A stretch of DNA of 64,000 nt from Hypanus sabinus. Lineage: Eukaryota. How positions within the stretch are numbered: the first letter of the stretch is position 1; each line of letters begins with the position of its first letter. Below are positions 10,346-61,799 of the stretch, piece by piece. The stretch is from contig NC_082707.1 of assembly GCF_030144855.1 (NCBI RefSeq), positions 46,562,001-46,626,000 on the forward strand. The letters are read 5' to 3'. Made by a program: the position numbers and the translations under genes. Under the pieces are notes generated by a model. The model ran no database searches. It was not told where the DNA came from and saw only the letters and a program-made list of their open reading frames with translations.

Positions 10346-11199
10346 GCGTATAATAGTTCGGGATAGACTAGGTGGGCCCAAGGGGCTGTGTTGTAGTGCT
10401 CTGTGACTCTCTGTGTGTATCTGACAAAAGCTTGGGATTTTGACGTCACAAGTCAAAGTGTGACTACCTCTCTCTGGTTGCTGCACAAAGAGAAATGTGA
10501 TAAGAAATGAGGACACGAGATAGTATGGAGAAAATAATGACCTGTATTTTAAAAAGAGGAAACTAACACAAAGCTTTGGAAAATTAAACCTGTGGAAAAA
10601 TGAATTTGGAGAGAATGCAACACTAAAACTGGAAAAATATAATTTTATCTTTCGTTAAGCTTTTATTCAACAAATGAAGTTATTTCAAATTAAAGTGACA
10701 AGGTGGGAAGTGATTGAATAATACTGTCCTAATGCACCAAATATATTCTTTGCTGTATGTGTCTGCATCTGCTTGTGTGCATGCATGTGTGTGTCTGTGT
10801 GTGTGGGAGGAGGCATGGATGATTAGCAGCTGACTATAGGTGTGGAATCTGTAAAGTGACTGTTAGCTAAGCCCCAAGGCATCAGTTCCAGATTTGCCTT
10901 TAATTGGCTGTCAGGCCAAATTACAACAACCCCAGTGATACGCTTGATATAATTGAACATTCCCATGGTCACTCCGAAGAGCTTCTCCAGCAGATGTAAG
11001 CGTGAAATGGAGGTGGAGGTTAAAGGAATAGGTTGCGGCCCCCTCCCTCTCCCCCCTATGGAGCCATGTCAGGGTCCTGCTCCTCTAAAGCAAGGGAAAC
11101 GGCAAATTATTTCGTCTGATTTTGTAGCAGAGCTATATCAGGCCTCTCAGTGCCTCGTGTAAGGGTGTGAAATAGATTAAGGTACCTGGGGAACACCTG

Positions 11200-13660
11200 A
11201 ACGTAGCCTGAGTCAATATTTTCTTCCGTTCTCAAGCGCACCGCCTTACAAAACCGGACGATTGAGGTTTGCGTTTAGAGACCAAGAGTGTATTCAAATG
11301 TACGCCACTAACCTTCAGCGTCGCCTTAAAATTTCCAGTGCGGATATCTGACCGACTGCTTATTCAATTGCCATAACCTGATGGATTTGTCTTGTAAACC
11401 ACATCCCGGCCTGACGTTCACCCAGCTGTAACTGCACCTGCCACTCTAACACCAGCATTCGTCTCTCTAGGTAAACGCTTCGCTTCCCTGCCCTTGCTCA
11501 CGGGATAGCGGCACACGATGCTGGTCAACTGGACATCGCCGCCACTGCAGTGAATAGGGGGAGGGGACTTTCAGAAGGGCAGTATGTTGCCGGTCATGTT
11601 ACCCACACAAATCGTGTCCCAGCGCCAGCCATCATTGTCGCTACTTCCATAGGAAGTTCATTGTCAGAGAGACCAGACCGGCTCACGCATCGCAACTTCC
11701 ATTTCTAAGTGTTAAATCTTCTACTTACTCATTTAGGGAACGAATAAAGTTGGCGCAAAATTGTAAGCCAGACAATGTCCTTTTGAAAAGCATTTTGTGC
11801 ATGCATTTTCCCGAATTGCACTAAGTTCTTCCTCTTTTTACCATCTTAAAGTTACAGTAAAGATGAGGTACAGGGAAGGTGAGAGGCAACACGCGGGATG
11901 TGATCGCTGCCGGTTCCGAGGACGGGTGCAATTATCCCATCTCTTGCGGGTCGCCTTCCTCGCTGTCGTCCGCTGCTGCCACCGCGTCCTGGTCGCTGGT
12001 TCCGCTGCCCAGCGACGACTCACTGCTGGTGCTTTCGCCGGACAGGAGTCGAGTAACTCGGAGATCAGCCCTCAGTAACTGGACGTCGTTGCCTATCGTC
12101 AATTCGCCCAGCTCGCTGATAAGCTCGGAATAGCTGTGGCGCTCGTCGCTGGCCGAGGGCTCCGTTCTGCCCAGGATGTCCTCGTACTCCAGGCTGATCT
12201 CCAGCAGGGCTCTCTGTTCCTCCTCCTCCCCCACCAGGTCCTCGGTGATCGAGCCCAGCTTCGGGGCGCTTCTGCTCCTCTCCACCGGAGGCTTGTAGCT
12301 GCACTGGCCGTTCATCAGCTTCCTCAGCGGAACCAAGGGGATGCTCTGCTCCCCGACCAGCTTCTGCTGCTGGTGCCTGGCGTCGTCCCTCCTCTTCAGC
12401 CTCTTGAACTCGGCCAGGGCGTTGCTGGAGGTCTGGTAGAGGAGGAGGGCCATTGCCTTAGCTTTCTCGGGCTTGGAGACCAGCACGGCGTGACACCTCA
12501 GCATCACAGCCTTGTGCTTCAGTTCGTGCCTGTAGATCCAGGCGAAGATTTTTGGAGATCGGGGATCTGCCACGCAGTAGGTGATCCTGTGCAGGAGGTA
12601 CAGGTGACCCGGTCTCCTTGCCTTGCCGTCGACGTGAACCATGCGGATTCCCTGAGAGCTGATGGTCAGCTTCATCCTGGTGCCGCTCTTGCCCTGCTCG
12701 CTCTTGCTCCAGATCTTGGTCACCGCCACATCGGCGCAGCCCTCGCCTTTGGATTGAATGGTGGCGGCGTTGCCGAGGTACAGCACCGTGTAGGTGGGAT
12801 CCTCGCCCGTGATCTTGATCTTCCTCCTCTTGGATTTAAACATGCTGCAGACCCGGTTGAGGGCACTCTCCGCCACCACGTCCGGGCAGGCGCGGGCAAG
12901 CGAAGTGATAGTGTTACAGTTCAAACTCACCGAGTAGCCGAGCTGCTTCGGCTGCTGCTTCTCGATTAAATCAAATTTATTTTTCTTCCAAGGTAGCATC
13001 GCTGATGCATAAATATATTGATATATATTCTTAATTTGTTTACAGGGCTATAGGTGCGGGGAGGTGAGCGCCGCGGCCGTTTCCATGCCTGTCCTGGACA
13101 GGCTGCCGGCTGATCATGTTCCTTACACTGACTCGTGTAAGTTCCAATGGTCCGAGGTAGAGAGCTGTAAATATCAACTGGGGCGAACCATCCAGTCATC
13201 GGAGTGGGGAGGAGCAGATTGAGGAAGTTCCCGAGGAGATAGAGCAATTAACCGTTCCAATGCCTGGGAACCGCTGCTGGCTCTTTGCCAACATTGAGGT
13301 GCCCCTCGATCACGAATGCCCAGCGCTCGCTGCACACCAATTGAGACCATAACTTCTACTTTTGCTTGTGAATGTTTTGTCACCAAAACAGAGAGAGAAA
13401 AGAAAATAATTTATTCATGAACGCATTACGCAAGATTCCTGAGCTCACGCTGATGAGAGGTAAAGCGGCCGAGGGTATGATGTTCAGATATTAATACCGA
13501 GAAGCTGGTGGGTGGGAGAGTATTCCTTGGAACAATGAAACTCTTCACCGGCAAAAGTGCCCACTTTTAAGGCCACCTTGGCTTGCTGCCCTGGTCCACT
13601 TTCCGCTGATGTGGGTTGGAGAAGTTTGCACCGCCGCCTGCCGTCAGGAAGCCCCCCGGC
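11200..13660. promoter_or_regulatory. CpG/GC-rich island spanning FAM43A and its 5' region
   Basis: Visible CpG enrichment relative to AT-rich flanks. Confidence 0.55.
11932..12999 (-). CDS. FAM43A: Protein FAM43A (PTB/PID-like domain), single coding exon, 355 aa
   Basis: Intact ORF MLPWKKNKF...DPTYTVLYLGNA...GHLYLLHRITYCVAD...AWIYRHELKHKAVMLRCHAVLVSKPEKAKAMALLLYQ...YKPPVERSRSAPKLGSITEDL matches vertebrate FAM43A as recalled; GC-rich; syntenic with LSG1/TMEM44. Confidence 0.95.
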   Translation of the reverse strand: MLPWKKNKFDLIEKQQPKQLGYSVSLNCNTITSLARACPDVVAESALNRVCSMFKSKRRKIKITGEDPTYTVLYLGNAATIQSKGEGCADVAVTKIWSKSEQGKSGTRMKLTISSQGIRMVHVDGKARRPGHLYLLHRITYCVADPRSPKIFAWIYRHELKHKAVMLRCHAVLVSKPEKAKAMALLLYQTSSNALAEFKRLKRRDDARHQQQKLVGEQSIPLVPLRKLMNGQCSYKPPVERSRSAPKLGSITEDLVGEEEEQRALLEISLEYEDILGRTEPSASDERHSYSELISELGELTIGNDVQLLRADLRVTRLLSGESTSSESSLGSGTSDQDAVAAADDSEEGDPQEMG

Positions 13661-22300: not shown

Positions 22301-23439
22301 TTAGAGTAAGACTGCCCTTCAAACTTACTCAACGCTTATCAGGTGTTTACGAGAATGACTTACACAAGTTGACTGGACCGGAAATGACTTTGCCACATCT
22401 AAATTTTGTGATTAGGGTAATGTGTAGAGGTCCATCTGTCTTTTTTTACTTTTGTTTTAATATTGCAGTCATCTTCTAACTGAATAGTTGGCTTGACTAT
22501 GCCAAGAAAGGCACTTAAGAGTCAACCACATTGCTGAGGGTAGCGAGCTGCATGTGGGCCAGAATGGGTAATGATGCAGATTTCATTCTGGGAAAGACAT
22601 TCCTGAAGGAGATTTGTTTTTAAATTAATTGGTGGTCATCACTTGCAAGGTGACAAATGGTGATCAGCTATCGATGTAATACAATTTGGTAAGAATCTGC
22701 ATATTTAAAACTGCCAGGGGAACTAATTTGAACACATGCAAGTAAACTATTCTGGTGTGAAAGTTTAGAACAAAGGACACAACCAGAAAATTAGGGATAG
22801 ATCATTCAGTAATGAAGTCACACTGCATGTTTCACATAACTTAGTGACAATGTAACTCCCTCAAAAGATAATTGGCAGGTCAGCTTTTTTTGAACTATGC
22901 TCCCAAACAATGGAATTTAATACTATTTAATAATAATTTAATAAAACTACGAGGGATGCAGACTCAGTTGACACTTTTAAATGCCAGCTCAAAACGTGTT
23001 TATTTAACCCTGCTTTTAATACAGAAACATCTTTTATCTTTTATTTTTACGTTTGCACGTTATTGTAAAGCACTTTGAATTGCATTCTCTAGAATACTAA
23101 TATATTATTAGTATATAATATTTTTTATTATTAGTTTGTAGGTTTGGAGATTGTCGCAACCAATTGAAAAATTAAGGACTGGGATCAACAGTTTTCCACT
23201 GCTACAGGATACAGAGATAAAACAGGACAACTGAGTTCACACATCAAACTTTGTGCTTGCGTGCGTGCGTTGCTTTTTAAATACATTTTATACCATCCTA
23301 AATTATTTGATCAAGCTTCAGCAAATGAATCTTTGGAATCAAAGATCGGAAAGAATACGATATGATTTCACATTAGACCTTTAGTAAACTAACTGTTTGC
23401 AAGACAAGCAATGAATCGAGACTAAAATGATGGAATATG

Positions 23440-23740: not shown

Positions 23741-26700
23741 TTTGACTCACTTCGGTGATAATCATTCCCTGTTACCTCCAACCCTCTCTCCTATTCTTCC
23801 ACCATAAAAGCACTGAACTTCCTTCCACATCGAATGGATAGTCTCGCATTTCCCTATCTACTAACTTCTCGGGCCCCGAGTTGTACTTTTTAGTAACTTG
23901 ATAACTGTCGAATCTGGCATCGGAATCAAGAGTTATTATCACCGGCATGTGTCGTGAAAACTTAGCAGCAGCACACTGCAGTACATGATGATATAGAAGG
24001 GGGAAAAGTAAATCAATTGCAGTAAGTGTATGTCTGCAGATTAAATAGTTAGATTAAAAATAGTGCAAAACAAATAATATAAAAGAGTGAGGCCGTGATA
24101 GTGGGTTCAGTGCTCATTTCAGAATCGAATGGCAGAGGGAAAGAAGCTGTTCCTGACTCGCGGAGTGTGTGCCTTCAAACTTCTGTACCTCCTACCTGAC
24201 GGTAACAATGAGAAGAGGGCATCCCCTGGCCGATGGGGGCCCTTAATAATGGACACCTGCCTTTCTGAGGCACTGCTCCTTAAAGGTGTCGTGGATACTG
24301 CGGAGGCTAGTACCCAAGATGGAACTGACTTATTTTCCAACTTCCTGTAGCTCCTTTCCATCCTGTGCAGTAGTGTGCACACCCCCCACACACCTTACCA
24401 AACAGTGATCAATGCACTTCATCTAAATAATTAAATTTAGAATTGGCTGGCAGACAGACAACATGTAACCAGTCCTTTTCTAAGTAGTAGGCAGTGACAA
24501 TTATAAACACGAGAAATTCTGCAGATGCTGAAAATACACAGAATGCTGGAGGAACTCAGCAGGTCAGGTAGCATCTATGGAACTGAATAACCAGTCAATG
24601 TTTTGAGCAGAGACATGTTTTTCATGTTCGTGTTCTCAGGACTGGAAAGGAACGGGGAAGATGCTAGACGAAAGAGGTGGGGTGAGGAGAAGGAGGATAG
24701 CTAGAAGGTGATGGGGGAAGCCAGGTGGATGAGAAAGGTAAAGGGCTGTAGAGGAAGGAATCTTCCTCTACACGAATAGGAAAGGAGAGTGGACCATGGA
24801 AGAAAAGGAAGGAGGAGGGGACCCAGGGAGAAGCAGGTGAGAAGAAGCAAGAGGAAGGAAAAAGTTTATTTACCCAGAAGGGGAAATCATGCCATCAGGT
24901 TGGTGGCCACTTAGGTGGAATATAAGATGTTGCTCCTCCACCTGGAGGGTGGCCTCATCGTGACACAAGAGGAGGCCATGGACTGAAATGTCGCACAGGA
25001 ATCGAAATTAAAATGCTTGGTCACAGGGAAGCTCTGCTTTTGGCTGAAGGAGCAGAGGTGCTCGATGAAGTGAACCTCCACTGATGGGCCTCACCAAGTT
25101 AGGGGAGACTGCATTGGGAACACTGGATGCAGTTGACAACCCCAGCAGTGATAATTGCCAAGTTTATTGCTAGGACCCCAGCTATTCATGTTATGTTTAG
25201 ATTGGGGAATTAAGTGCAATATCAGGAAATCTGCAGACAACGTTATGAAAGAAAGCTTGCAGGAAGCTGAGAAGGCAAAGAGTACCCTGCTTCTTAGAAA
25301 CATAGAAAACCTACAGCACAATACAGGTCTTTCAGCCCACAAAGCTGTGCTGAACACATCCCTACCTTAGAAATTACTAGGCTTACCTATAGCCCTCTAT
25401 TTTACTAATCTCCATGTACCTATCTAAAAGCCTCTTAAAAGACCCTTTCGTATCCGCCTCCACCACTGTTGCCGGCAGTCCATTCCATACACTCACCACT
25501 CTGAGTAAAAAAATTTACCCCTGACATTTTCTCTGTACCTACTCCCCAGCACCTTAAACCTGTGTCCTCTTGTGGCAACCATTTCAGCCCTGGGAAAAAG
25601 CCTCTTACTATCCACACAATCAACGCCCCTCATCATCTTGTACACCTCTATCAGGTCACCTCTCATCCAATGTCGCTTCAAGGAGAAAAGGCTGAGTTCA
25701 CTCAATCTGGTTTCATAAGGCATGCTCCCCAATCCAGGCAACATCCTTGTAAATCTCCTCTGCACCCTTTCTATGGCTTGCACATCCTTCCTGTAGTGAG
25801 GAGACCAGAACTGAGCACAGTACTCCAAGTGGGGTCTGACCATAGCTGCATTTTCTTAAAATGAAGAAAATTAATTATTGAAGCAGTGATGTCTTGCTGG
25901 AGTTGTAGAGGGTTTTGGGGAGACTATGCCTTGACTATTGGTCATTTTGATCTCCTTCCTTGAGGAAGGGTATTCTTGCCATTGAGGGATTACAGCAAAG
26001 GGTTCACCTGTCTTATTCCTGGGATTTGAAGACTGATGTATGGGGACATATAGGCTTGAATTTTTTGGGGTTTAGAGGAACGGAGAGCAACTTACTGAAG
26101 CATTAAATCCTGATGATGGGATAGTGCAGAATAAATGAATGAATGTCTACTGGAAACCAGTACATCCCCCCTTTCCCTCTTCTCCCTAAACTCTGATTTC
26201 ATAAAGCAATTTCATGAAAGCCAGGATCAAATCTGAGTACACCACATTGCTCACTGTAACACCTTTCATGAAGTTAGTCACGTCAGTGGTAGGGAAGCTG
26301 TTGGAAATATGATTTATGAGCATTTAGAAATACATAGCTTAATTAGGGACAGTTGACATGGCTTTGTGCAGGATAGGTTTTGTCTTATTAACTTGATTGA
26401 GTTTTTTGAGGAGGTGACTGTGGTGATCAAAGAGGGTAGAGCACTGGAGGTTGTCTATGTAGATTTTCATAAGACATTTGATAAAGTCCCTTGTGATCAT
26501 CTCATCTAGATGATTCTGGTCATTTTGACTCAGAATTGGGTTGCCCATGGAAGGTGGAGCATTGAAGTCATTGGTTCTTATTCTGGGTGGAGGTTCTTGA
26601 CTAAAATAGTGCCACAGGGATCTATACCGAGACCTCTGGTCTTGATTGCGGATTGGTAGCTTTACTGAGAGTATAAAAAAAATGGTGGTGTTCTGGATAA

Positions 26701-29700: not shown

Positions 29701-32700
29701 CCCCTTTAACATTAACTCTTCACCTTGCATTCATTAAGTTGTAACAATCTTTAAACTGCTCTTTCTCATAGCTATGACACACCAAAGTTCATCTGATTAT
29801 ACAGTAACTTGTTCCATTCCCTAAAGGATTTTAAAGCATTATTTTCAGTTGTAGTGTTGCAAATAAAGTATAGCTTTTGAGGTTGAGGATAGCTTTAGTT
29901 ACTTATATATTAATTCAGCTGGCAAATTCTGCCCTCTTAGATCTCATCTAAGATCTGGCTGTCCATGCTCTAAATGTTCACTAAGATATGATCATCCAAA
30001 ATCTTAGTGCTCACTGATATGTCTTGATCAAGCTTTAATCTTAAAACTATTTAGGTTTTCACATCCCTTTATAGCTTCATACTCCCAGTCTTTATAGTCT
30101 CTTCTCCATCTTTATAATCTCTTCCAGTCCAATAGTATGATACCTTGTCTTCCATTAGTGTGGCATCTTGAACATCGAGTTTAATTGCTCCAACAATGAT
30201 GGCAATGTCTTTTGTTTTGAACCTGTACTCAAGAATTTTGTTCCTGAATCCCTGTCACTCTTTCCTTAAGACACAACTTAAAACGAACAATTTTGACTGA
30301 ACTTTTGTGTGACTGCACTACTATGTGTCTTGGAATTAAAGTTTGTTGATGATACTGCTGTTAGGAGCTATCTGACATGTTACCAGTGCACCAATGTAAA
30401 TAAGAGTGTATCTCATTTTCATAGCTCAAAATCACGTCAAGTGCTTTACCCAGTTTATTCCTACACCAGGTTGTTCAGTTTACAAATTTTTTTGCTGCTT
30501 TATATTGCTTCCATTGAAAAGCTAAATGATTTCACAATCTCTCTTTCCTGGGAATGTCTGATTGCTGAATTAGCAGTGAATTTGCTCTATTAATGCTAAT
30601 GGTCATATGTGAAAATTGTTTTAAGTTTTATCTTTTCCTCAATTGCTTATGTTTCCTGTAGACCTCATTGGGATGAGAATACAGCTGCAGAAGAACTGCA
30701 AAAAGCAGAAAGGGAAAGCTTCTTAGAATGGAGGAGACAATTAGCTCAGTGAGTATTGTAGATTATATAATTTGTAGTCAGCTGACATGCTCTGCATCTG
30801 GTTGATATTTCTTGTAATAAGATTTATTATTGGTTTATTACTTTTTTTGTTTTTGGGTAGCAATATAATGTCAAAACAAAAATTACTCTAAATTACAAAA
30901 TTAAATACTGCATACAAATGGAATGATAAGGTAGTGTTCAGAAATATGATGGTGGAGGGTCAGAAGCTGTTTCTGAATCACTGAGTATGTGTCTTCAGGC
31001 TTCTCTGTCTCCTGATAGCAGGAGCAAGAAGGCGGCATGTCCCAATTGGTTAGGAACCTTGCTTGACAGATGCTACCTTGATGGTGGCCTTTTGAAAGTA
31101 TTCTCTGGTGTCGAGGGTTGTGCCTGTGGTGGAAATGCTGAGTTTACAACCATCTTTTTGACAGATAGACAGACAGGCATACTTTATTGATCCTGAGGGA
31201 AATTGGGTTTCATTACAGCCGCACCAAGAATAGTGAAGAAATATAGCAATATAAAGCCATAAATAATTAAATAATAATGTTAATCATGCCAGGTGGAAAT
31301 AAGTCCAGGACCAGCCTATTGGCTCAGGGTGTCTGACACTCCGAGAGAGGAGTTGTAAAGTTTGATGGCCACAGGTAGGAATGACTTCCTGTGCCACTCA
31401 GTGTTACATCTCAGTGGAATGAGTCTCTGGCTGAATGTACTCCTGTGCCTAACTAGTACACTATGGAGTGGATGGGAGTCATTGTCCAAGATGGCATGCA
31501 ACTTGAACAGCATCCTCTTTTCAGACACCATCGTCAGAGAGTCCAGTTCCACCCCCACAACATCACTGGCCTTACAAATGAGTTTGTTGATTCTGTTGGT
31601 GTCTGCTACCCTCAGCCTGCTGCCCCAGCACACAACAGCAAACATGATAGCACTGGCCACCACAGCCTTGTAAAACATCCTCAGCATCATCCGGCAGATG
31701 TTAAAGGACCTCAGTCTCCTCAGAGATGGCTCTGACCCTTCTTGTAGACAGCCTCAGTGTTCTTTGACCAGTCCAGTTTATTGCCAATTCGTATCCCCAA
31801 ATATTTGTAATCCTCCACCATGTCCACACTGACCCCTTGGATGGAAACAGAGGTCACCGGTGCCTTAGCCCTCCTCAGGTCCACCACCAGCTCCTTAGTC
31901 TTTTTCACATTAAGCTGCAGATGATTCTGCTCACACCATGTGACAAAGTTTCATCTTCGTGAATTGAGTGTGATTTTTGTATATAAATTTGATAAATATT
32001 GAAAATGAAGAGCAGTTTTGATTCCTTTCAGATCTGAGTCTTAGAAGGTCACTATTGAGCATGGGCAGGCAATGGTAAATTACTGGGATTTATTCTGCTG
32101 CTTATTTAATTATTTTCAATTTTCTTCATTCTGATTCTGTGGGTTGCTCATTGGCTTGCAGTCCAGGGAAGGTGAACTGAAACTTGGTGATTTTTTGTGT
32201 ATAAATTTAGTTCAGACTTGAGTTCTGAAAATGCAAAATATTAAATACTTGCCCATGTCCTCACCCTTCCAACTGTGTGGCAGGAATTTAGTAATGATTT
32301 TTCAAAATGTCTGCTGTAACTTTTGAATGTGATTTGAAGAGATCCTGAAAAAATAATGTATAGAACAGTTGGTCAAAAGTGAGAGTGGCACTGAAAATCT
32401 CTGGTTTTACTTGATACCCAGCTTACTCAAGTGCAAAATATACAAATTTGCCCTTGAAAGTATTAAGTTAATCTTATCACTGTGACTTTTTAAATAAGTT
32501 TTCATCTGCCACTGATTTGTGACCACCATGGTGTATTTTTTCTGCAAGACTTAATGCACAATATTCTCATTTTCCCTTATTTATAATGTGTACATCAACT
32601 AAAAATCTGGTGATAATACATTAAAAATTGTTGCTTTTTTGCATTTAAGATTAAGAAACCTGGATAAAGACTTGCCTTTTGTTCTATTCAGTTTAAATAG

Positions 32701-35700
32701 CAGGATAATTTTGAGTTAAGGTTCTATTTAGGGAGAATTTCATGTGTAACTTTAAACTTGAAAGCAAAATAATTGATTTTTATCTTGACATTTGTGTGCC
32801 AAATTAGAGCATGTTGCAACACAGGATAGGTCAGAAGACTCCAAAACTACTTTTATGCAAGAGTTACTATTTTGGCAGATCAGTTTTTTGTCGCAAATAA
32901 TTAGTCACTTTTTATAGATTCTGGGATGGAAATTCTGTGCGTATGTCACTCATGTTTTACCATCATCATACCGAGACAGATTTACAAGTTCCCTTTTTGT
33001 CCAGGCTGGAAGAGGAAAGAAACCTGATTCTTACACCATTTGAAAAGAATCTGGACTTCTGGCGTCAGCTGTGGAGAGTTATTGAAAGAAGGTACGCTAT
33101 GTAGAAACTTCATTCCCTGCAGTGGCCATGCAGCATTCTTTTCGTATTCAATCCTCTTCCCATATCATTTGCCTTCAAAAGCTCATAATTCTGAACCAGT
33201 TCTGCATTTGAATAGTTTTTATAATTCCATAATGAATTCTACCAACTTTGAAATATTTCCTGCCCTGTTGGGGTAACAGTAAGTTCTGTCAGATATTTAA
33301 AAAAAAAATGTCTTTAACATTCTTCCATGCTAAATCTATAAACGTGTCCAGCTTTACTAGATTAACTTAACATATTTAAAATGTTATCTTTCATGCATCA
33401 TTGCCAATTGTTCATTCATTGCTCTGAACTTGTGCATTAGTGTAATATGTATCTTGAAAATTTCTCTTATATTCCCCTTTCTCTGAATTTTCTAACTTCG
33501 TCTGAGAACTTATTGTGGCACAAGGGTGTGTTAAATAAATCATACAGGCTAAACTGGTTGACTTTAATTGTAAACTTGTGGATTAAAGTTTCATTTTTGA
33601 TCATAGCTGTGTATATTGCAAGTGTTCAGTTACTTATCATGGGTTGTATTTAAAAGTACTTAAAATTTGAGTATTTTGGCTGTATCTTTAAATTGTGAAT
33701 GTATTTATGTTTTTTTTTTGTGCAGTGACATCATTGTTCAGATTGTTGATGCTAGAAACCCACTGCTTTTCCGGTGTGAAGATTTGGTGGGTAAAAATTT
33801 AGTTACTGCCTCTTTGCCAACAGTGCATGATTTCACTCATTCTAAAATGCAGAAATCATTCAAATAATGTGATTGTCCTTGCTGAGTTATGTTCTACATT
33901 GTGTAGAACTGTCGTGTGAAAATATTGTATTTATATTTTTACAGTTTTAATGTTGTTGCCTTGGAATAAATAAAGGGTTCTTTAAAATGTTAAAGTTTCA
34001 CATTTGAAAACTGCATTGTAATGACAGGGCATGAACACGAGTAAGTCTGCAGATGCTGGAAATCCAGAGAAACACACACAACGTGCTGGAGGAACTCAAC
34101 AGATCAGGCAGCGTCAATGGCATTGAATAGAGAGTTGATGTTTTGGGCCAAGGCCCTTCTTTAGGACTGAGAAGGAAGGGGGAACATGCCAGAATAAAAA
34201 GGTGGGGATCGGGGAAAGAGGCTAGCTGGAAGATGATTGGTGAAGCGAGGTAGGTGGGAAAGATCAAGGGCTAGCGAAGAAGGAATCTTATAGGAGAGGA
34301 GAGTGGACCATAGGAGAAAGGGAAGGTGGAGGGACCCAGGAGAAGTAATAGGCAAGTGAGAAGAGATGAAAGGTCAGAGTGGGTAATAGAGGAAGGGGGG
34401 TTGGGTAGTTTGTTTACTGGAAGAAGAAATTGATGTGCATGCCATCTGGATGGAATTTAAGCTGTTGCTCCTCCACCCTGAGGATAGCCTCATCTTGGTA
34501 CAAGAAGAGGCCATGAACCGGCATGTTGGAACGGGAATTTGAATCAGAATTAAAATGCTTGGCCACTGAGAAGTCCTGCAAGTGGCGGGTGGAGCGGAGG
34601 TGCTCGACGAAGCGGTCCCCCAATTTGCATTGGGTCTCACAAATGTAGAAGAAGCCGCATTGGGAGCAGGGGAAGTGTTGCCTCTCCTGGCAGGATTGTC
34701 TAGAGTCCTGAATAGAGGTGAGGGAGGAGGTGTATGAGGCAGGTACAGTGGCATGCAAAAGTTTGGGCACCCCTAGTCAAAATTTCTGTTACTGTGAATA
34801 GTTAAGTGAGTCGAAGATGAACTGATCTCCAAAAGTCATGAAGTTAAAGATGAAACGTTCTTTTCAACATTTTAAGCAAGATTAGTGTATTACAGTTGGT
34901 CCTCCTTATCCGCGGATTCTGCATGTGCGAATTCAACCAACTGCGAATCGCGAAAACCCGGAAATGCTCTTCTAGCACTTGTTGTTCGAGCATGTACAGA
35001 CTTTTTTCTTGTCATTATTCCCTAAACGATGCAGTATAACAACCATTTTACATAGCATTTACATTGTATTAGGTATTATAAGTAATCCAGAGATGATTTA
35101 AAGTATATGGGAGGATGTGCGTGGGTTATTGTGCATTGGGATCGAAAAAAATCGGAAGTTCTCTTACTAAATAAGTTGGAACAGGTACATCCGGTGTTAT
35201 TTAGTGTCAGTTAGTCAAACGTTTGTCTTAGTATATAGTATATATTTTACCTTTCTATACATACAAAACACTTAAGAACGTATGTTTCAGCGCTGGGCTC
35301 AGGAACAGAATTTCCCAAGTTCGATCGAGTGACAGATCGCTCCCGAGTGTACTCTCCTCCGTGCTGGTTTGATGTGGAGGATCAAAAACCTGAAACCCCA
35401 AAACCCAATAATTAAACCACTGCGTTGCTTAGTAACAGTTGTAGCCTTCATCAGGGCAGGGCCTTTCTCACTTTATCCTTTAAAATTGTTCCGATGGTTG
35501 ACGGACATAGCCTAATGCTTTTCCAATGACCGATGGCGTTTCACCTCTATCTCATCACTTTATTATTTCCACTTTATTTTCTTTGTAATTAATTTTTTTT
35601 ATTGAAGTTCATCAAACAAACATTTCCATAAGATGTATTTCAGACATTGTACATATACATCATATAATCATATATATCACAAATCTCCACGAAGTATTTA

Positions 35701-38700
35701 TCTGAGGTATACACTTACAGAAAAAAGTGGAAAGAAAAAACAAGCAAAAGGAAAGAACTATGTACAAGTAGGGAGTGATCTTTTTTTTTTACAACGGATT
35801 CATTGATTTGTGAGAATAAAATCAGGCCTATGAGGCATTATGTAGTTAAACCATTTTTCCCCAGTATGAATCAAATTGTTCCAGCTTATGATTAACAGCT
35901 GCAGTTATCTTCTCCATTTTGTAAATGTCCATTGTAATTTCCATCCATGTATTTAAAGTTGGGCTCTCCTGTGATAACCATTTCCTAGTAAGAGTCTTTT
36001 TACCAGCCACCAACAGTATATTCATTAAATATTTATCTCTTGTCAACCATTCTTGAGGTATATATCCAAAATATATGGTCTTACTCTCCAAGGGTATTTC
36101 ACATTTAAAGATGTCTTGTAGGGCATTGTGTATCCCCCTCCAATGTTTTTTGATCACAGGGCAGTCCCAAAAAATATGATAATGATTTGCATTTTGATTT
36201 CCACAATTTCTCCAGCAAACATGGAGGTTACTATCATAATGGGATTTCTGAGAGGTTGTAATAAAATATCAAGTTTTTCCATCCAAACTCCCTCCATTTC
36301 TGTGAATTGGTACACTTTCATTCAGAGCTCTGGCGCCGGGTCCTAATGTCCACCGCACTGAGACAGGTTAAATACGGTCTGGGGTTCCACTGGGTCCTAA
36401 GGTCCACCGTATTGAGACAGGTTGAATAAGGGACTTGAGCATCCGCAAATTTTGGTATCCGCGAGGGGTCCTGGATAAGGAGGGCCGACTGTATTTTTGT
36501 TTTGTATAATTTTAGAGTGAAAGAAAGGAAAGGAGCACCATGCAAAAGTTTGGGTACCCCAAGAGATATGAGCTCTCAGATAACTTTTACCAAGGTCTCA
36601 GACCTTAATTAGTGGGTTAGAGCTATGGCTTGTTCACAATCATTGTTAGGAAAGGCCAGGTGTTGCAAATTTCAAAGCTTTATAAATACCCTGACTCCTC
36701 AAACCTTGTCCCACCAGTCAGCAGCCATGGGCTCCTCTAAGCAGCTGCCTGGCACTCTGAAAATTAAAATAAATGATACCCACAAAGCAGGAAAAAGCTA
36801 TAAGAAGACAGAAAGCATTTTCAGGTAGCCGTTTCCTCAGTTTGTTATGTAATTAAGAAATGGCAGTTAACAGGAATGGTGGAGGTCAAATTGAGGTCTG
36901 GAAGACCAAGAAAACTTACTGAGAGAACTGCTCGTAGGATTGCTAGAAAGGCAAAAGACCTTCAGGAAGATTTAGCAAACTCTGAAGTGGTGGCACTGTT
37001 CTACTGTGCAGTAACATCTGCACAAAATGACCTTCATGGAAGAGTTGTGAGAAAAAAACCTTTCCTGCATCCTCACCACAAAATTCTGCATTGGAAGTTT
37101 GCAAAGAAACATCTAAACAAGCCTGATGCATTTTGGAAACAAGTCCTGTGGACTGATGAAGTTAAAATAGAACTTTTTGGCTGCAAAGGTATGTTTGGAG
37201 AAAAAAGGGTGCAGAATTTAATGAAAAGAATACCTCTCCAACTGTTAAGCACGGGGGTGGATCGATCATGCTTTGGGCTTGTGTTGCAGCCAGTGGCACA
37301 GGGAACATTTCACTGGTAGAGGGAAGAATGTATTCAATTAAATATCAGCAAATTCTGGAAGCAAGCATCACACCATCTATAAAAAAGCTGAAGATGAGAA
37401 AAGGATTGCTTCTACAACAGGATAATGATCCTAAACACACCTCAAAATCCACAATGGACTACCTCAAGAGGCGCAAGTTGAAGGTTTTCCCATGGCCCTC
37501 ATAGTCCCCCGACCTAAACATCATCAGAAATCTGTGGATAGACCTCAAAAGAGCAGAGCATGCAAGACGGCCCAAGAATCTCACAGAACTAGAAGCCTTT
37601 TGCAAGGATGAATGGGCGAAAATCCCCCAAACAAGAATTGAAAGATTCTTAGCTGGCTACAGAAAGCGTTTACAAGCTGTGATACTTGCCAAAGGGGGTG
37701 TTACTAAGAACTGACCATGCAGGGTGCCCAAACTTTTGCTTCGGGCCCTTTTCCTTTTTTGTTATTTTGAAACTGTAAAAGATGGAAATAAAAAAGTCAT
37801 CTTGCTTAAAGATGTGTCATCTTTAACTTTATGCCTTTTGGAAATCAGGTCATCTTTTACTCGCTTAGCTATTCACAGTAACAGAAATTTTGACCAGGGA
37901 CAAATGGGCAAGGGAATCACAGAGGAAGTGATCCCTGCGGAAAGTGGAGGGGTGGGGGTAAGGATATGCTTAGCGGTAGGATCCCTTTGTAGATGGCAAA
38001 AGTTGAAGAAGATAATTTGTTGGATGCAGAGACTGATGGGTTGGTAGATAAGGACAAGAAGAAGTCTCACTGTTATGGTTGCCCAAAGATGGGGTGAGTG
38101 TGGACATACAGGAAATGCAGGAGATGCGGGTGAGGGCGGCATCACTAGTGGAGGGAGGGAAGCCCCGTTCTTTAAGGAAGGAGGGCATCTCCGAAGTCCT
38201 GGAAAGGAAAGTCATGTCCTGGGAACAGATGTGGCAGAGGTGAAGGAACAGAAAAGAGAATAGCATTTTTACAAGAGATAGGGTGGGAAGATGTATAGTT
38301 GAGATAACCTTGTGAACCAGTAGGTTTATAAAATATGTTGGTTGACAGTTTGTCTCCGGAGATGGAGACAGAAAGATCGAGAAAATGGAGGGAGATGTGA
38401 TGACAGGGTAAATTATACTTGAAGGGAAAAGTGGTGATCTGAGAGTCACACTTCATAATTATTCATGGATAATGTAGTTTAAGGTCATCTGAATGAGATG
38501 CTGGAAACAAATTAAGCACTATCAGCAGAGAGAAACAATTATCATCTGAGACCCTTCAGAATGGAAAAAAAAGAGTTGAGTTTTAAGTTGCTGCGAGGTT
38601 GGGGGAGGCATGGAAATGACAAAGGGAGTATTTTTGAGTGAGGCTAGAGTCCCTCTGGATGTAAATCTAGAGATTATCTGGTCAATGGGTTAATGAGAGC

Positions 38701-50700: not shown

Positions 50701-53220
50701 GGCAGTGAATGTTGTCTACAACAATGTTAGTAAGTCGTTTGACAAAGTCCCTCATGGGAGGCTAATCCAGAAGATTAAGATGCATGGGATCCGGGGCAAA
50801 TTGGCTGTTTGGATTCAGAACTGGTTTGCGCATTGAAGACAGAAGGTAGTGGTTGAAGGGACTTGGTCGAGCTAGAGCTCTGTAATTAGTGGAGTTCCAG
50901 AAGTATCTGTGCTAGACCTTTGCTGTTTGTGGTGTATATAAATGGCCTGATTGAAAATGTAAGTGGTGGGTTAGTAAGTTTGTAGATGATACCAAGATTG
51001 GCAGAGTTGTGGATAGTGTAGAAGACTGTAAAGGAATGTAGCACGACAAAGATCATTTGCAGATATGGGCTGAGAAATGGCAGATGGAATTTAACCCAGA
51101 TAAATGTGAGGTGTTGTATCTTGGTAGGGTAAATACAAGAAGACAGTTCACTGTTAAGGGCAAGATCCTTGCCAGTGTTGCAGAGCAGAGAGATCTTGGG
51201 ATCCAAGTTCTATGCTCTTTGAAAGTGGCTATACAGGTCAATATTGTGGTCAAGAAGGCTAATGGAATGCTTACTTTTATTAGTAGAAGCACTGAGTTCA
51301 AAAATCAAGAGATTATGTTGCCACTTTATAAAACATTGGTTCAACCACATCTGGAGTGTTGCATACAGTTCTGGTTGCCCCATTATAGGAAGGTTGTTGA
51401 AACTTTGGAGAGGGTACAGAAGAGGTTTACCAGGATGCTTCCTGATTCAGAGGGCATGTGCTATCATGAGAGGCTGGATAAACTTGGGTTGTTTTCTCTG
51501 GAACGTTGGAGGCTGAGTGGAGTTCTGATAGAGGTTTACAAGATTATGAGAGGTAGAGATAGAGTGGACAGAGAGCTTCTGTTTCCCAGGGTTGAAATGT
51601 CTAATGCAAGAGGGCATGCTTTGAAAGTGAGAGGGGGTAAGTTCAAGAGGGATGAGACGGTTGTTGTTTATTCAGAGTGTTATGTGCTCCCTGATATGGT
51701 GGTAGAGGCTTTTAAGAGACGTTTGGATAGATAGGCACATGATGTAAGAAAGTCAAAGGGATTAGATACATGGTGTAGGTAGGAGGGTATTTTTGATTTG
51801 CTTTTTAGCTGGTTTGGCACAATGTTTTTGCCTGAATGGCCTTTTCCTGTGTTGTACTATTCTATGCTATATTTAAGTGCAGATGAGCAATTGTTGATCG
51901 GGTTGGGAGTACCAGTGCATTCTTTACTACAGCGATTGGTGATAAGACTACAATTCACAAGTTAATGGATGCTTGCTTGAGGTTTACAACATTGAAGGCA
52001 GAACCTGTGAATGGAATTAATTACACAGTGTTTCAAGAAGCTGACACTGACTAGATGGGCTGGATGCTCTATGCATGCATATGTAATATAAAATTAAAAT
52101 GCACTGCTATTGCTCTCTGTATCTATGGCACCCTTCCTTGGCAAATGGGCAGAGTTCATTATACAATATTTCTGCAGCACAAAAACGGACCTTCACATCA
52201 ATAAATGTGCTGGTGTTGATGCTCCTCTTACTGCACAAACAACAGAACCTGAAAATATGAGGAAGATGGTATCAGATTTCTTTAAAAGTCAGAGTAATGC
52301 CTTCAGAACCTCAAGCTGAATGTGAGCTGATATATTTTGAAAGAAAATCAAGAGATAGAAATTAAATGCCTGTTTATTTTCAGGGCAAGTTGTTGTACTG
52401 TCATCCTCCACCTGGTATTGATCCTGCCCATTTCCAAAATCATCATGCTGCCTTTGAAGAACACATTGTTACGTGTGACAAGAACAGCACAAAACTCAAA
52501 GGGAAACAAAATAAAGTAAAAAGAATTGAAAATGATGTGGACAAAATCTTCTTTCATCAGGTAAAAAAGCACAACAAGCAGCATGCATGATAGTATATTT
52601 TTGTGCCTAATAGATCTTAAATAGCAGGAGCTTTAGTTGAATATAACAATAAATTATTCTAAATAAATGAAATTCCTCTATATTTTTAGTACCATTTCTT
52701 TATTAACTGCTTTTTAATATATTCACGAATGTAAAAAATTACAGGAGTACTAATTTGAGAGTGAAATTAGATATTTGGAGAGTTAAGTTATTGGAGAAAT
52801 ATTTCTTAAGAAACATGTCAGTAATTTTGAACCCAAGGCACTTGGAGGTTCTAATAGTCTTTGACTATATTCATATTCTGAAAATACATTTTCAAGATTG
52901 AGGTACTTGGGATCCACACAGCATATTCCTCAAACATGCCTAGTCTTATAGCTTTACTCCTTCTTTTAGCTATGTGGTAAAGCTTTGTCTCATGAATGGA
53001 TAAAAAATTATACGAAATGCTTGCAACTAAAAAGTACATAATTTACTTGTTAAAGGAGAATGTTCGAGCTTTGACAAAGGGAGCTCAAGTAGCAATGGGA
53101 TTCAAGCTTGGCACTGAAGCAACACCAGTGAATGGAGTGGCAGGAAAACCTTGGAAAAAACATGGCAACAGGAACAAGAAGGAAAAAATAAGGAGAGTTT
53201 GCAAGCATCTGGACGACTGA
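23564..53220 (+). CDS. LSG1: Large subunit GTPase 1 homolog (60S export factor, circularly permuted GTPase); 14 coding exons, 1947 nt, 648 aa
   Basis: Manual splice model join(23564-23662,28286-28412,29427-29547,30662-30748,33005-33091,33726-33786,40386-40562,43053-43448,44600-44701,45290-45433,46775-46898,48887-48966,52384-52560,53056-53220) keeps one open frame. Motifs DARNP, NKAD (G4), GYPNVGKS (G1), TPGHT (G2), DCPG (G3), C-terminal KPWKKHGNRNKKEK. Confidence 0.95.
23910..24410 (-). mobile_element. Rex1/Babar 3' fragment (LSG1 intron 1)
   Basis: HRPGDALFSLLPSGRRYRSLKAHTPRVRNSFFPSAIRF. Confidence 0.85.
24505..25095 (-). mobile_element. Penelope-like element 3' fragment
   Basis: Same terminus (CTGCAGATGCTG...GGAACTCAGCAGG) and body as the GIY-YIG-bearing copies at 34034 and 57180. 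Confidence 0.7.
25295..25850 (-). mobile_element. CR1 LINE 3' fragment
   Basis: VRPHLEYCAQFWSPHYRKDVQAIERVQRRFTRMLPGL...TRGHRFKV. Confidence 0.88.
26280..27430 (+). mobile_element. Degenerate CR1 LINE
   Basis: RT remnants (CLINLIEFFEEVT, VYVDFHKTFDKVP, FNPGKCKVLHFGR). Confidence 0.75.
28286..28412 (+). CDS. LSG1: LSG1 exon 2
   Basis: tgtag acceptor; LHTSELNDGYNWGRLNLQSVTEQSTLDEFLATAELAGTEFVA; GTAAGA donor. Confidence 0.93.
29427..29547 (+). CDS. LSG1: LSG1 exon 3
   Basis: caatag acceptor; EKLNVKIISAEDRTGLLTAEENKKIKKLQEENKQFLCIPRR; GTGGGC donor. Confidence 0.92.
30662..30748 (+). CDS. LSG1: LSG1 exon 4
   Basis: ctgtag acceptor; PHWDENTAAEELQKAERESFLEWRRQLA; GTGAGT donor. Confidence 0.92.
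30890..31955 (-). mobile_element. Rex1/Babar LINE fragments (two subfamilies)
   Basis: KTKELVVDLRR...YKYLGIRIGNKLDWSKNT; LRMFYKAVVASAIMFAVVCWG...RKSFLPVAIKLYN. Confidence 0.85.
33005..33091 (+). CDS. LSG1: LSG1 exon 5
   Basis: gtccag acceptor; LEEERNLILTPFEKNLDFWRQLWRVIER; GTACGC donor. Confidence 0.93.
33726..33786 (+). CDS. LSG1: LSG1 exon 6
   Basis: tgcag acceptor; DIIVQIVDARNPLLFRCEDL; GTGGGT donor. Confidence 0.93.
34893..36491. mobile_element. Tigger/pogo-type non-autonomous element (MER2-like) inserted in the Tc1 left TIR
   Basis: TA TSD (34891-34892, 36492-36493); TIRs CAGTTGGTCCTCCTTATCC and GGATAAGGAGGGCCGACTG (17/19 match). Confidence 0.85.
35588..36315 (-). mobile_element. L1-clade LINE 3' fragment inside the Tigger element
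   Basis: ORF2 C-terminus WREFGWKNL...IFWDCPVIKKHW...LLVAGKKTLTRKW..ESPTLNTW; poly(A) and AATAAA near 35590. Confidence 0.75.
36727..37714 (+). pseudogene. Tc1 transposase pseudogene
   Basis: MGSSKQL..., RSGRPRKL, VLWTDEVKIELFG, LQQDNDPKHTSK, WPS*SPDLNIIRNLW (catalytic E replaced); frameshifts and a stop. Confidence 0.9.
40386..40562 (+). CDS. LSG1: LSG1 exon 7 (G4 NKAD)
   Basis: tttag acceptor; ERYVKEIQKDKVNMILLNKADLL...VVFWSATAEAKRLDAEAK; GTAGGC donor. Confidence 0.93.
41200..41505 (-). mobile_element. CR1 3' fragment
   Basis: FKIVKGIDRVNVSRLFP...TRARGH. Confidence 0.65.
43053..43448 (+). CDS. LSG1: LSG1 exon 8 (acidic insert)
   Basis: aaatag acceptor; GEEQSGER...YEDCEDDELWETCSEDE...ELLEIFKTLHKGKRVKDVEITVGL; GTGAGT donor. 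Confidence 0.88.
44282..44358 (+). repeat. Intronic partial duplicate of LSG1 exon 8
   Basis: Aligns with 43304-43377 with several substitutions and two small indels. Confidence 0.75.
44600..44701 (+). CDS. LSG1: LSG1 exon 9 (G1/G2)
   Basis: gatag acceptor; VGYPNVGKSSTINTIFQNKKVSVSATPGHTKHFQ; GTAATG donor. Confidence 0.95.
45290..45433 (+). CDS. LSG1: LSG1 exon 10 (G3 DCPG), followed by U12-type donor
   Basis: tatag acceptor; TLYVEADLCLCDCPGLVMPSFVSTKAEMVCSGILPIDQMRDHVPPVSL then ATATCCTTT. Confidence 0.92.
45434..46774 (+). other. U12-type (minor spliceosome) intron 10 of LSG1, apparent AT-AT termini
   Basis: 5' ATATCCTTT; branch site TTCCTTGAC at 46758-46766; ends ...GGGCTAT before GTC TGC CAG (VCQ). 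Confidence 0.85.
46020..46372 (-). mobile_element. SINE-like repeat, probably RTE-related, within the U12 intron
   Basis: - strand AATGGAATAGCAAACCACTTCTGTAG resembles RTE/Bov-B-derived SINE segments as recalled; perfect 11-bp terminal hairpin at 46032-46060. Confidence 0.4.
46775..46898 (+). CDS. LSG1: LSG1 exon 11
   Basis: VCQHIPRHVLEATYGINIIRPREDEDPNRQPTHEELLTAYG; GTAAGT donor. Confidence 0.9.
47167..47978. mobile_element. Penelope-derived inverted-repeat insertion with 15-bp TSD
   Basis: Arms 47170-47526 and 47573-47933; TSD TCAATCAATAACCCA at 47152-47166 and 47979-47993. Confidence 0.88.
47847..47882 (+). ncRNA. Minimal type I hammerhead-ribozyme-like motif (Penelope-associated, probably degenerate)
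   Basis: AGTC-CTGACGA-A-GGGTCTCGGCCC-GAAAC-ATC-GAC: CUGANGA and GAAA cores, stem II hairpin, GUC/GAC stem I. Confidence 0.55.
48887..48966 (+). CDS. LSG1: LSG1 exon 12
   Basis: atacag acceptor; YMRGFMTAHGQPDQPRAARYILKDYVT; GTAAGT donor. Confidence 0.94.
49130..51870 (+). mobile_element. Near full-length ORF2 remnant of a CR1 LINE (APE endonuclease plus RT)
   Basis: ETWLREG, LDLMLGNEP, SDHN, PGNYRLVSL, WAEKWQMEFNPDKC, LERVQKRFTRM; multiple frameshifts. Confidence 0.9.
52384..52560 (+). CDS. LSG1: LSG1 exon 13
   Basis: ttttcag acceptor; GKLLYCHPPPGIDP...IENDVDKIFFHQ; GTAAAA donor. Confidence 0.93.
53056..53220 (+). CDS. LSG1: LSG1 exon 14 (terminal coding exon)
   Basis: taaag acceptor; ENVRALTKGAQVAMG...GKPWKKHGNRNKKEKIRRVCKHLDD*. 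Confidence 0.93.
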   Translation, partial: ENVRALTKGAQVAMGFKLGTEATPVNGVAGKPWKKHGNRNKKEKIRRVCKHLDD

Positions 53221-60294: not shown

Positions 60295-61582
60295 GACTGA
60301 ACTCTTGCCTCCGCAAGGACCTGGACCCATTGCAATTTGTCTATCGTCACAACAGGTCAACGGCAGACACAGTCTCCATGGCTCTTCACACGGCTTCAGA
60401 CCACCTAGACAACACAAACACCTACATCAGGATGCTGTTCATTATCTAGCTCAGCACTTAATACCATCATTCCCACAATCCTGATTGAGAAGCTGCAGAA
60501 CCTGGGCCTCTGTACCTCCCTCTGCAAATGGATCCTCGATTTCCTAACCAGAAGACCACTGTCTGTGCAGATTGGTGTTAACATATTCTTCTCGCTGACG
60601 ATCAACACTGGCGCACCTCAGGGGTATGTGCTTAGCCCACTGCTCTACTCTCTCTATACACTTTTCTGTGTGGCTAGGCATAGCTTAAACACCATCTACA
60701 AATTTGCTGACGATACAACGATTGTTGGTAGAATCTCAGATGGAGACAAGAGAGTGTACAGGAGTGAGATATGCCGCAGCAACAACCGTCAATAAGACGA
60801 AAGAGCTGATTGTGGACTTCAGGAGGGGTAAGACAAAGGAACACGTACCAATCCTCATAGAGGAATCAGAAGTGGAGAGAGTGAGCAGCTTCGGGTTCCT
60901 GGGTGCCAAGATCTCTGAGGATCTAGCCTGGTCCCAACATATTGATGTAGTGATAAAGAAGGCAAGACAGCAGCTATACTTTATTAGGAGTTTGAAGCGA
61001 TTTAGCATGTCAACAAATACGCTCAAACACTTCTATATTTGCACCGTGGAGAGCATTGTGACAGGCTGCATCACTGTCTGGTATGGAGGGGCTACTGCAC
61101 AGGACAGAAAGAAGCTGCAGAAGGTTGTAAATCTAGTCAGCTCCACCTTGGATACTAGACTACAAAGTACCAGGACATCTTCAGGGAGCGGTGTCTCAGA
61201 AAGGCGGCGTCCATTATTAAGGACCTCCGGCACCCAGGGCATGCCCTTTTCTCACTGTTACCATCAGGTAGGAGGTACAGAAGCCTGAAGGCACACACTC
61301 AGTGATTCAGGAACAGCTTCTTCCCCTCTGCCATCCGATTCCTAAATGGACTTTAAAGCTTTAGACACGACCTCACTTTTTTAATATACAGTATTTCTGT
61401 TTTTGCACGTTTTTAAAATAATCTATGCAATATAAGTAATAGATGTTCTTGTTTGTTTATTTTTTTATTTTATTGTTTTTTTCTCTCTCTGCTAGATTAT
61501 TTATTGCATTGAACTGCTGCTGCTAAGTTAACAAATTTCACGTCACATGCCGGTGATAATAAACCTGATTCTGATTCTGATT
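60295..61582 (+). mobile_element. Rex1/Babar LINE with 3' tail
   Basis: [17 protein letters not shown]...[35 protein letters not shown]; ends AATAAACCTGATTCTGATTCTGATT. Confidence 0.88.
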
Positions 61583-61799
61583 GTAGTGAGATTACCCGAT
61601 AAGAAAGTAATTGACAACTTCCCATGAAGCGCGGATTCCCAGGGCTTGTTATTGTCTGAAGACCGCAGTACGGTGTAGGAGCAAACTGAGGACAACTCGG
61701 TAACTAGTATTTGCAACCTTAAGTGAGAGGAATGCTGCACCTTTAAGACTTTTCAATAAGTGCCTGTTTCATTTGGAAACATACCTGTTTTGACTTTAA

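What the first reader, a model, noticed from the sequence alone, without database searches (positions are those of the whole stretch)
34893..36491. MER2-like Tigger element in a cartilaginous fish: horizontal-transfer candidate
Seen: a TA-flanked TIR element. Its non-coding segments 34991-35128 (CATGTACAGACTTTTTTCTTGTCATTATTCCCTAAAC...TTACATTGTATTAGGTATTATAAGTAATCCAGAGATGATTTAAAGTATATGGGAGGATGTGCGT) and 36427-36475 (TAAGGGACTTGAGCATCCGC..ATTTTGGTATCCGCG.GGGGTCCTGGA) match, by eye and from memory, the reverse complement of the eutherian MER2 consensus at roughly 90% identity. Extra internal sequence (about 35130-35580 and 36320-36425) is not in MER2 as I recall it. Established: neutral non-coding DNA does not keep such identity across the chondrichthyan-mammal split, and Tc1/mariner elements are frequent horizontal movers. 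Inference: the same Tigger family invaded rays and placental ancestors independently, and this genome may hold longer or autonomous relatives of MER2.
Basis: partly seen in the sequence, partly recalled or inferred. Interest (0 to 1): 0.72.

Follow-up and report, generated by a model that had tools for sequence, protein, structure and literature searches.

The report
Decayed Tigger transposon in stingray DNA
This is a real but broken cut-and-paste "Tigger" jumping gene in a stingray genome, probably a fairly recent arrival, but its claimed close likeness to the human and placental-mammal repeat MER2, on which the horizontal-transfer idea rests, could not be tested here.

Summary
The structure is confirmed. 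A TA-flanked element at 34893-36491 has 21-nt inverted ends (19/21). It is the only copy in the window. It sits in the left inverted repeat of a Tc1 element, whose right repeat serves as a rough empty site.

It is not a simple MITE. Its sense strand is the window's minus strand. A 5'-truncated L1-type LINE tail (35591-36296) splits it. The "extra" sequence at 35290-35577 looks, by eye only, like the frameshifted first ~100 codons of a pogo/Tigger transposase. That makes it an internally deleted derivative of about 880 bp.

Its end type (CAGT....CCTC.TTATCCGCGG) also occurs in published aphid, leafhopper and ant Tiggers, so end similarity alone says little.

The Tigger parts keep CpG at 0.87 of expectation. 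The window average is 0.32, the older Tc1 host 0.20 and the younger L1 guest 0.11. This fits a recent arrival.

The ~90% identity to MER2 was not tested.

Horizontal transfer is the likeliest origin but is inferred. Two other first-reader notes report similar elements elsewhere in this genome.

Verdict: an ordinary kind of element, moderate interest.

The parts
34891..34892 (.). TA target-site duplication, left copy
   Evidence: Read directly. It is matched by TA at 36492-36493. The right repeat of the Tc1 host aligns across this point.
34893..34913 (-). Terminal inverted repeat. This is the 3' end in the element's own orientation.
   Evidence: 19 alignable core positions against the other end, with two transitions. 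One of them is at a CpG. The end is unique in the window.
34914..34985 (-). 3' subterminal region, CpG-rich, holding the CCGCGG-type motif
   Evidence: The whole left end 34893-34985 has CpG o/e 1.25. The TTATCCGCGG motif is shared with insect Tigger ends in Diaby Table S1.
34986..35129 (-). It is probably the 3' untranslated or subterminal part of the parent element. It was not analysed against anything.
   Evidence: The tool says this is no evidence.
35130..35289 (-). Internal non-coding stretch, the likely site of the internal deletion junction
   Evidence: No long open frame and no match to anything. The reading is inference.
35290..35577 (-). Frameshifted remnant of the first ~100 codons of a pogo/Tigger transposase (the N-terminal helix-turn-helix region)
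   Evidence: The translations give the pieces ENKVEIIK**DRGETPSVIGKALG, STIGTILKDKVRKALP and LMKATTVTKQRSGLII. By eye they align with the N-termini of shark and aphid Tigger transposases printed in the Diaby 2022 supplement, with about 15 of 40 residues identical. Pfam, PDB, Atlas and protein-database searches of the separate pieces found nothing.
35578..35590 (-). Target-site duplication of the LINE insertion, downstream copy
   Evidence: It matches 36297-36308 at 11 of 13 positions with one gap.
35591..36296 (-). 5'-truncated L1-type LINE 3' end inserted into the Tigger element. It has a poly(A) at 35593-35600 preceded by AATAAA.
   Evidence: A 140-aa open piece (35849-36268) carries a Cys/His motif. 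Its nearest Atlas clusters are chordate proteins with the reverse-transcriptase zinc-binding domain, scoring 0.94-0.96. CpG o/e is 0.11.
36297..36308 (-). Target-site duplication of the LINE insertion, upstream copy
36319..36321 (-). Putative transposase start codon
   Evidence: Removing the LINE and one copy of its duplication puts this ATG in frame with the ENKVEIIK..DRGET piece. This was worked out and is inference.
36338..36431 (-). Two 40-nt direct repeats spaced 54 nt apart, in the 5' leader
   Evidence: 88% identity. Tandem Repeats Finder did not score them.
36427..36470 (-).
   Evidence: Read directly. It was not tested against any MER2 sequence.
36471..36491 (-). Terminal inverted repeat (5' end in the element's orientation)
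36492..36493 (.). TA target-site duplication, right copy
34746..37899 (+). Host Tc1 element, older than the Tigger insertion. It has the IR/DR-type left repeat, transposase ORF pieces at 36876-37504, and a right repeat truncated near 37899.
   Evidence: Repeat arms match at 88% (34771-34856 against 37899-37814) and 82%. See also the alignment. Pfam HTH_Tnp_Tc3_2 scores E=2e-4 on 36876-37319. CpG o/e is 0.20.

Best explanation
The feature is a dead, non-autonomous pogo/Tigger DNA transposon of about 880 bp once its later LINE guest is removed. It arose from an autonomous Tigger by an internal deletion. The deletion kept both ends, the 5' leader, roughly the first 100 codons of the transposase, and the 3' untranslated part. 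A Tigger transposase supplied in trans moved it by cut-and-paste into a TA inside the left inverted repeat of an older Tc1 element. An L1-type LINE later retrotransposed into its 5' coding part.

Shown: the ends, the TA duplication, the order of nesting, the LINE insertion with its own duplication, and the unusually high CpG content.

Inferred: that the internal stretch is transposase remnant; that the family reached the stingray lineage fairly recently by horizontal transfer, as is usual for this superfamily; and that it is a close relative of the lineage that left MER2 in placental mammals. This last point rests on recollection only.
For: - Ends and TA duplication.
- Paralogous empty site in the Tc1 right repeat.
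- LINE guest with poly(A), a duplication matching at 11 of 13 positions, and zinc-binding-domain look-alikes.
- Frame pieces resembling Tigger N-termini printed in PMC9219625.
- The ATG at 36321 falls in frame once the LINE is removed.
- The end type CAGT....CCTC.TTATCCGCGG is listed for aphid, leafhopper and ant Tiggers in PMC9219625 Table S1.
- CpG o/e is 0.87 (35 CpG in 886 nt). About 12.9 are expected at the window's 0.32 (Poisson P = 3e-7). The older host has 0.20 and the younger guest 0.11.
- Part of 34893-35585 occurs as near-identical 31-mers in runs of nine coded organisms, including very small data sets. This points to a multi-copy family found in several species.
- DNA transposons in vertebrates are known to spread by horizontal transfer and to decay neutrally afterwards: PMC7070016.
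Against: - The transposase remnant has no statistical support. Pfam, PDB, Atlas, the protein database and two metagenome scans found nothing for the pieces.
- The identity to MER2 was never measured.
- High CpG could also reflect a locally unmethylated region, or constraint on CpG-bearing binding motifs, and it rests on only 35 sites.
- The organisms are coded, so the taxonomic spread is unknown. No run holds half of the words.
- Three scans of viral contigs found no possible vector.
Confidence: 0.6

Rival explanations
1. It is a generic Tigger derivative with no special tie to MER2. The likeness is confined to the end type and a few short motifs that many Tigger lineages share because the transposase binds them. 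In that case nothing links rays with placental mammals in particular.
For: The same end type is listed for aphids, a leafhopper, a termite and an ant.
Confidence: 0.22
2. It is a true MITE whose interior is captured host or unrelated DNA, not transposase remnant. The peptide resemblance is chance.
For: No search of the separate pieces gave any hit. The pieces are 15-25 residues long and need three frameshifts and two stops. Other Tigger-like elements in this genome are reported to carry captured rDNA (note s1-228281).
Against: The order and spacing of the three motifs follow those of real Tigger N-termini. They lie at the 5' side in the orientation set by the ends. An ATG falls in frame once the LINE is removed.
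Confidence: 0.12
3. Vertical inheritance: the lineage has been in vertebrates since before the split of cartilaginous fishes and mammals, and kept its sequence.
For: None found here. Cartilaginous fishes do evolve slowly (general knowledge).
Against: [quoted passage not shown] A long-resident lineage should be CpG-depleted, like the Tc1 and L1 next to it, but this element is not. None of the five chondrichthyan Tiggers in PMC9219625 Table S1 has this end type.
Confidence: 0.03
4. Assembly contamination or chimera, with foreign or mammalian DNA joined into the contig.
For: None.
Against: The element interrupts a fish-type Tc1 repeat precisely at a TA. It is itself interrupted by a LINE with its own duplication. 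Parts of it occur in many independent runs.
Confidence: 0.01

Closest known systems
Tigger elements of the pogo group (IS630-Tc1-mariner), as surveyed in Diaby et al. 2022 (PMC9219625) and Gao et al. 2020 (PMC7386202)
   Same: TA duplication. Ends of about 21-23 nt beginning CAGT. The end type CAGT....CCTC.TTATCCGCGG matches the aphid (Schizaphis, Sipha, Melanaphis) entries at 18 of 23 positions and the ant Aphaenogaster fulva entry at 16 of 19. The N-terminal motif order resembles Tigger transposases.
   Different: There is no intact transposase. The five chondrichthyan Tiggers in that survey have other ends, so this ray family is not among them.
MER2 / MER2B, non-autonomous Tigger-type repeats of placental mammals (Repbase and Dfam; listed in PMC5753468)
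   Same: Same superfamily and the same kind of element, a deletion derivative with TA duplication. By recollection only, the ends and two internal stretches are very similar.
   Different: Not tested here. This copy is longer and appears to keep the start of the transposase gene and a duplicated leader, which MER2 as recalled lacks. MER2 is a fossil dating from about the time placental lineages diverged (PMC1914374), whereas this copy still has near-random CpG.
Documented horizontal transfers of Tc1/mariner-type transposons among vertebrates (Zhang et al. 2020, PMC7070016; Kuraku et al. 2012, PMC3516227; Oliveira et al. 2012, PMC3517439)
   Same: The same class of element and the same proposed process. 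Aquatic vertebrates are the usual participants.
   Different: Fewer than 3% of the 975 inferred events involve mammals or birds. A ray-to-placental link would be one of the rarer kinds. None of the standard tests was run here.

Membership tests
pogo/Tigger DNA transposon (non-autonomous derivative) | TA target-site duplication | tested here: met
   TA at 34891-34892 and 36492-36493. The empty-site comparison with the Tc1 right repeat agrees.
pogo/Tigger DNA transposon (non-autonomous derivative) | Terminal inverted repeats of about 12-30 nt beginning CAG, of a catalogued Tigger type | tested here: met
   The ends match at 19/21. The end type is shared with insect Tigger entries in PMC9219625 Table S1.
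pogo/Tigger DNA transposon (non-autonomous derivative) | Derivation from an element encoding a pogo-type transposase (CENP-B-like N-terminal DNA-binding region plus DDE domain) | tested here: inconclusive
   By-eye motif match of the frame pieces to printed Tigger N-termini. No Pfam, PDB or Atlas hit for the separate pieces. No DDE part is present.
MITE in the strict sense | Short, no coding remnant, many near-uniform copies | tested here: inconclusive
   About 880 bp without the LINE, with an apparent coding remnant. There is one copy in the window.
MER2 / MER2B family (eutherian) | About 80% or more nucleotide identity to the family consensus over most of its length, including non-terminal parts | not testable with these tools
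   No Dfam or Repbase sequence is available. Papers that might print the consensus are not held. After the key stretch may not be sent to any search tool.
Horizontally transferred transposon | Element distance between hosts far below host-gene synonymous distance | not tested
   No copy from another named species could be obtained. Metagenome, viral and prokaryote-genome scans were empty.
Horizontally transferred transposon | Patchy taxonomic distribution or phylogenetic incongruence | not testable with these tools
   Nine organisms hold parts of it, but their names are coded.
Horizontally transferred transposon | Composition foreign to the host genome (supporting, not defining) | tested here: met
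   CpG o/e is 0.87, against 0.32 for the window, 0.20 for the Tc1 host and 0.11 for the L1 guest. This is above the window's 95th percentile for 886-nt windows.

The most novel reading that the evidence does not exclude
The Tigger lineage that left MER2 as a roughly 100-million-year-old fossil in placental mammals was active much more recently in stingrays. Copies there still carry transposase sequence. Its end type is shared with insect Tiggers. If so, rays would hold a far less decayed relative of the lost autonomous parent of MER2. They would also document one of the rare transposon transfers that tie the placental ancestor to aquatic vertebrates, perhaps through an arthropod reservoir.
Probability: 0.3. 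Interest if true: 0.55.

Novelty: new member of a known kind. Interest (0 to 1): 0.35.

Why it matters
If the MER2 link holds, it would give a dated, concrete case of one transposon lineage entering both placental ancestors and rays. Transfers involving mammals are scarce in large surveys (PMC7070016). It would also point to ray genomes as a place to recover the coding part of a family known in mammals only as short fossils. If the link does not hold, this is one more decayed Tigger derivative, useful only for repeat annotation. The CpG contrast between the element, its older host and its younger guest is a simple way to flag recent arrivals in this genome without any reference sequence.

Tried and rejected
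**Searches that led nowhere**
- Rfam scan of 34700-36700: only a chance snoRNA hit at E=0.34.
- Pfam on five frame pieces of the internal region: nothing.
- PDB with the 29-aa piece: only a chance kinase hit.
- The search for homologous proteins with the 57-aa piece: no candidate shared enough 5-residue words.
- Atlas with the same piece: no usable hit.
- Metagenome contigs: a peptide-based scan and a codon-degenerate DNA pattern from 35400-35450 both found nothing.
- Viral contigs: three patterns, 0 hits.
- Prokaryote genome contigs with the end pattern: 0 hits.
- The search of earlier findings by sequence: blank.
- Papers for a printed MER2 consensus (Jurka 1990, Smit and Riggs 1996, Pace and Feschotte 2007): not held.

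- Later look-ups inside one paper's supplement used only strings of 6-10 letters. Most came from the two ends. CTCGGTAT was recalled from the MER2 end.
- Local, window-only computations ran over the whole element.

**Steps not attempted**
- An X-joined read-through of the remnant.

**Readings rejected**
- Contamination, because of the nesting.
Full report
**What is there**

Reading 34600-36800 and the repeat search confirm a TA-flanked element. The inverted arms are 34891-34911 and 36473-36493 including the TA, 21 nt at 90% complementarity. A local alignment of the two ends stops after 19 positions with two transitions, one of them at a CpG. The 23-nt left end is unique in the window and absent from 100 shuffles. 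BLAST of 34700-36700 against the whole window finds no second copy.

**Context and order of events**

- The flanks are the left inverted repeat of a Tc1 element.
  - Segment 34771-34856 matches 37899-37814 at 88%, and 36521-36559 matches 37760-37722 at 82%.
  - The right repeat runs uninterrupted across the point where the left one is split, so it serves as a rough empty site.
  - Tc1 transposase ORF pieces lie at 36876-37504, with Pfam HTH_Tnp_Tc3_2 at E=2e-4.
  - The outer part of the right repeat is missing beyond about 37899.
- Inside the Tigger element, 35591-36296 on the minus strand is the 3' end of an L1-type LINE.
  - It has a 140-aa open piece with a Cys/His motif.
  - Its nearest Atlas clusters are chordate proteins with the reverse-transcriptase zinc-binding domain, scoring 0.94-0.96.
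  - It has AATAAA and an A-run at 35593-35600.
  - It has a duplication matching at 11 of 13 positions, 36297-36308 against 35578-35590.
- The order is therefore Tc1 first, then Tigger, then L1.
- This nesting excludes contamination.

**The 'extra' internal sequence**

The element's own sense strand is the window's minus strand. Translating 35600 to 35100 gives three short pieces in three frames:

- ENKVEIIK, two stops, DRGETPSVIGKALG
- STIGTILKDKVRKALP
- LMKATTVTKQRSGLII

The order and spacing of these pieces follow the N-terminal DNA-binding region of Tigger transposases. Compared by eye with the shark (Carcharodon) and aphid (Schizaphis) sequences printed in the supplement of Diaby et al. 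2022, about 15 of 40 positions are identical to the shark protein without gaps.

Removing the L1 and one copy of its duplication puts the ATG at 36321 in frame with the first piece.

I therefore read the element as an internally deleted derivative that keeps roughly the first 100 codons, not as a pure MITE. This is inference. Pfam, PDB, the Atlas and the protein database gave nothing for the separate pieces.

Upstream of the ATG lie two 40-nt direct repeats spaced 54 nt apart (88% identity).

**End type**

Table S1 of Diaby et al. 2022 lists Tigger ends of the same type:

- Three aphids have an end identical to the ray's left end at 18 of 23 positions.
- A leafhopper, a termite and an ant (Aphaenogaster fulva) have related ends. 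The ant end matches the ray's right end at 16 of 19 positions.

None of the five chondrichthyan Tiggers in that table has this type, and no listed end starts as the ray's ends do. So this ray family is not in that survey, and likeness of the ends alone is a lineage trait, not evidence of a specific transfer.

**Composition**

| Segment | CpG o/e |
|---|---|
| Tigger parts | 0.87 |
| Whole window | 0.32 |
| Tc1 host (older) | 0.20 |
| L1 guest (younger) | 0.11 |

The Tigger parts hold 35 CpG in 886 nt where about 13 are expected at the window's rate (Poisson P = 3e-7). Their value lies above the 95th percentile of all 886-nt windows.

The guest is younger at this site yet CpG-poor, so its depletion must come from a long-resident source lineage. 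By contrast, the Tigger family seems not to have spent long in a CpG-methylating germline, and this copy has decayed little since insertion. That fits a fairly recent arrival. A locally unmethylated region or constraint on CpG-bearing motifs are alternatives I cannot exclude.

**Distribution**

The look-up of sequencing runs on 34893-35585 lists 20 runs from nine coded organisms and nine studies, holding 17-41% of the sampled 31-mers. Several are very small data sets. This suggests a multi-copy family present in several species. The names are coded and no run holds half of the words, so nothing can be said about which taxa these are.

**The MER2 claim**

- This is the core of the finding, and I could not test it.
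- No repeat library is available, and papers likely to print the consensus are not held.
  - The tool states that the filter also trips by chance and is evidence of nothing, so I report the coincidence and do not count it.

**Literature**

- Tigger elements are reported in five chondrichthyan species.
- Transfers between placentals and two sharks have been claimed (PMC9219625). The tabulated element distances of the claimed transfer pairs that I saw (arthropod-carnivore) are about 0.7, against about 0.9 for host genes, which is weak.
- A screen of 307 vertebrate genomes found 975 transfers. Fewer than 3% involve mammals or birds. It also found that DNA transposons decay neutrally between transfers (PMC7070016).
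- Two other first-reader notes in this scan report MER2-like Tigger elements elsewhere in this genome. Another note reports an uninterrupted Tigger transposase. All are unchecked.

**Verdict**

The structure is real and is now better described. It is a known kind of element. Horizontal arrival is likely on general grounds and on CpG content. The specific and more interesting link to placental MER2 remains untested.

Noticed in passing
window 34746-37899: A Tc1 element with a long IR/DR-type left repeat, broken transposase ORF pieces (36876-37319, 37268-37504) and a right repeat lacking its outer ~30 nt. It is strongly CpG-depleted (o/e 0.20).
   Followed up: partly
window 35591-36296 (minus strand): A 5'-truncated L1-type LINE tail. 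It still has a 140-aa open piece despite a CpG o/e of 0.11, so it looks like a young insertion from a long-resident, CpG-poor source lineage.
   Followed up: partly
window 22750-23400 and 61150-62000: Two further stretches with CpG o/e of 0.8-1.0 in a window whose median is 0.24. They could be CpG islands or other recently arrived repeats.
   Followed up: no
window 11100-13000: A CpG-rich region around an uninterrupted 355-aa ORF on the minus strand (11932-12999). It looks like a single-exon host gene. From memory it resembles FAM43A, a neighbour of LSG1 in mammals. This was not checked.
   Followed up: no
window 4047-4638, 25493-25843, 31316-31690, 51057-51734, 60704-61288, 63025-63384: Several ORFs share a similar C-terminal motif pattern (for example RVQRRFTRMLPG ... 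LFSLE) and look like repeated tails of one or two LINE families on both strands.
   Followed up: no
PMC9219625 supplementary Table S3: The published claimed Tigger transfer pairs that I saw tabulated (arthropod species against the carnivore Helogale parvula) have element distances near 0.7 against host-gene distances near 0.9. This margin is far thinner than is usual for a transfer claim.
   Followed up: partly
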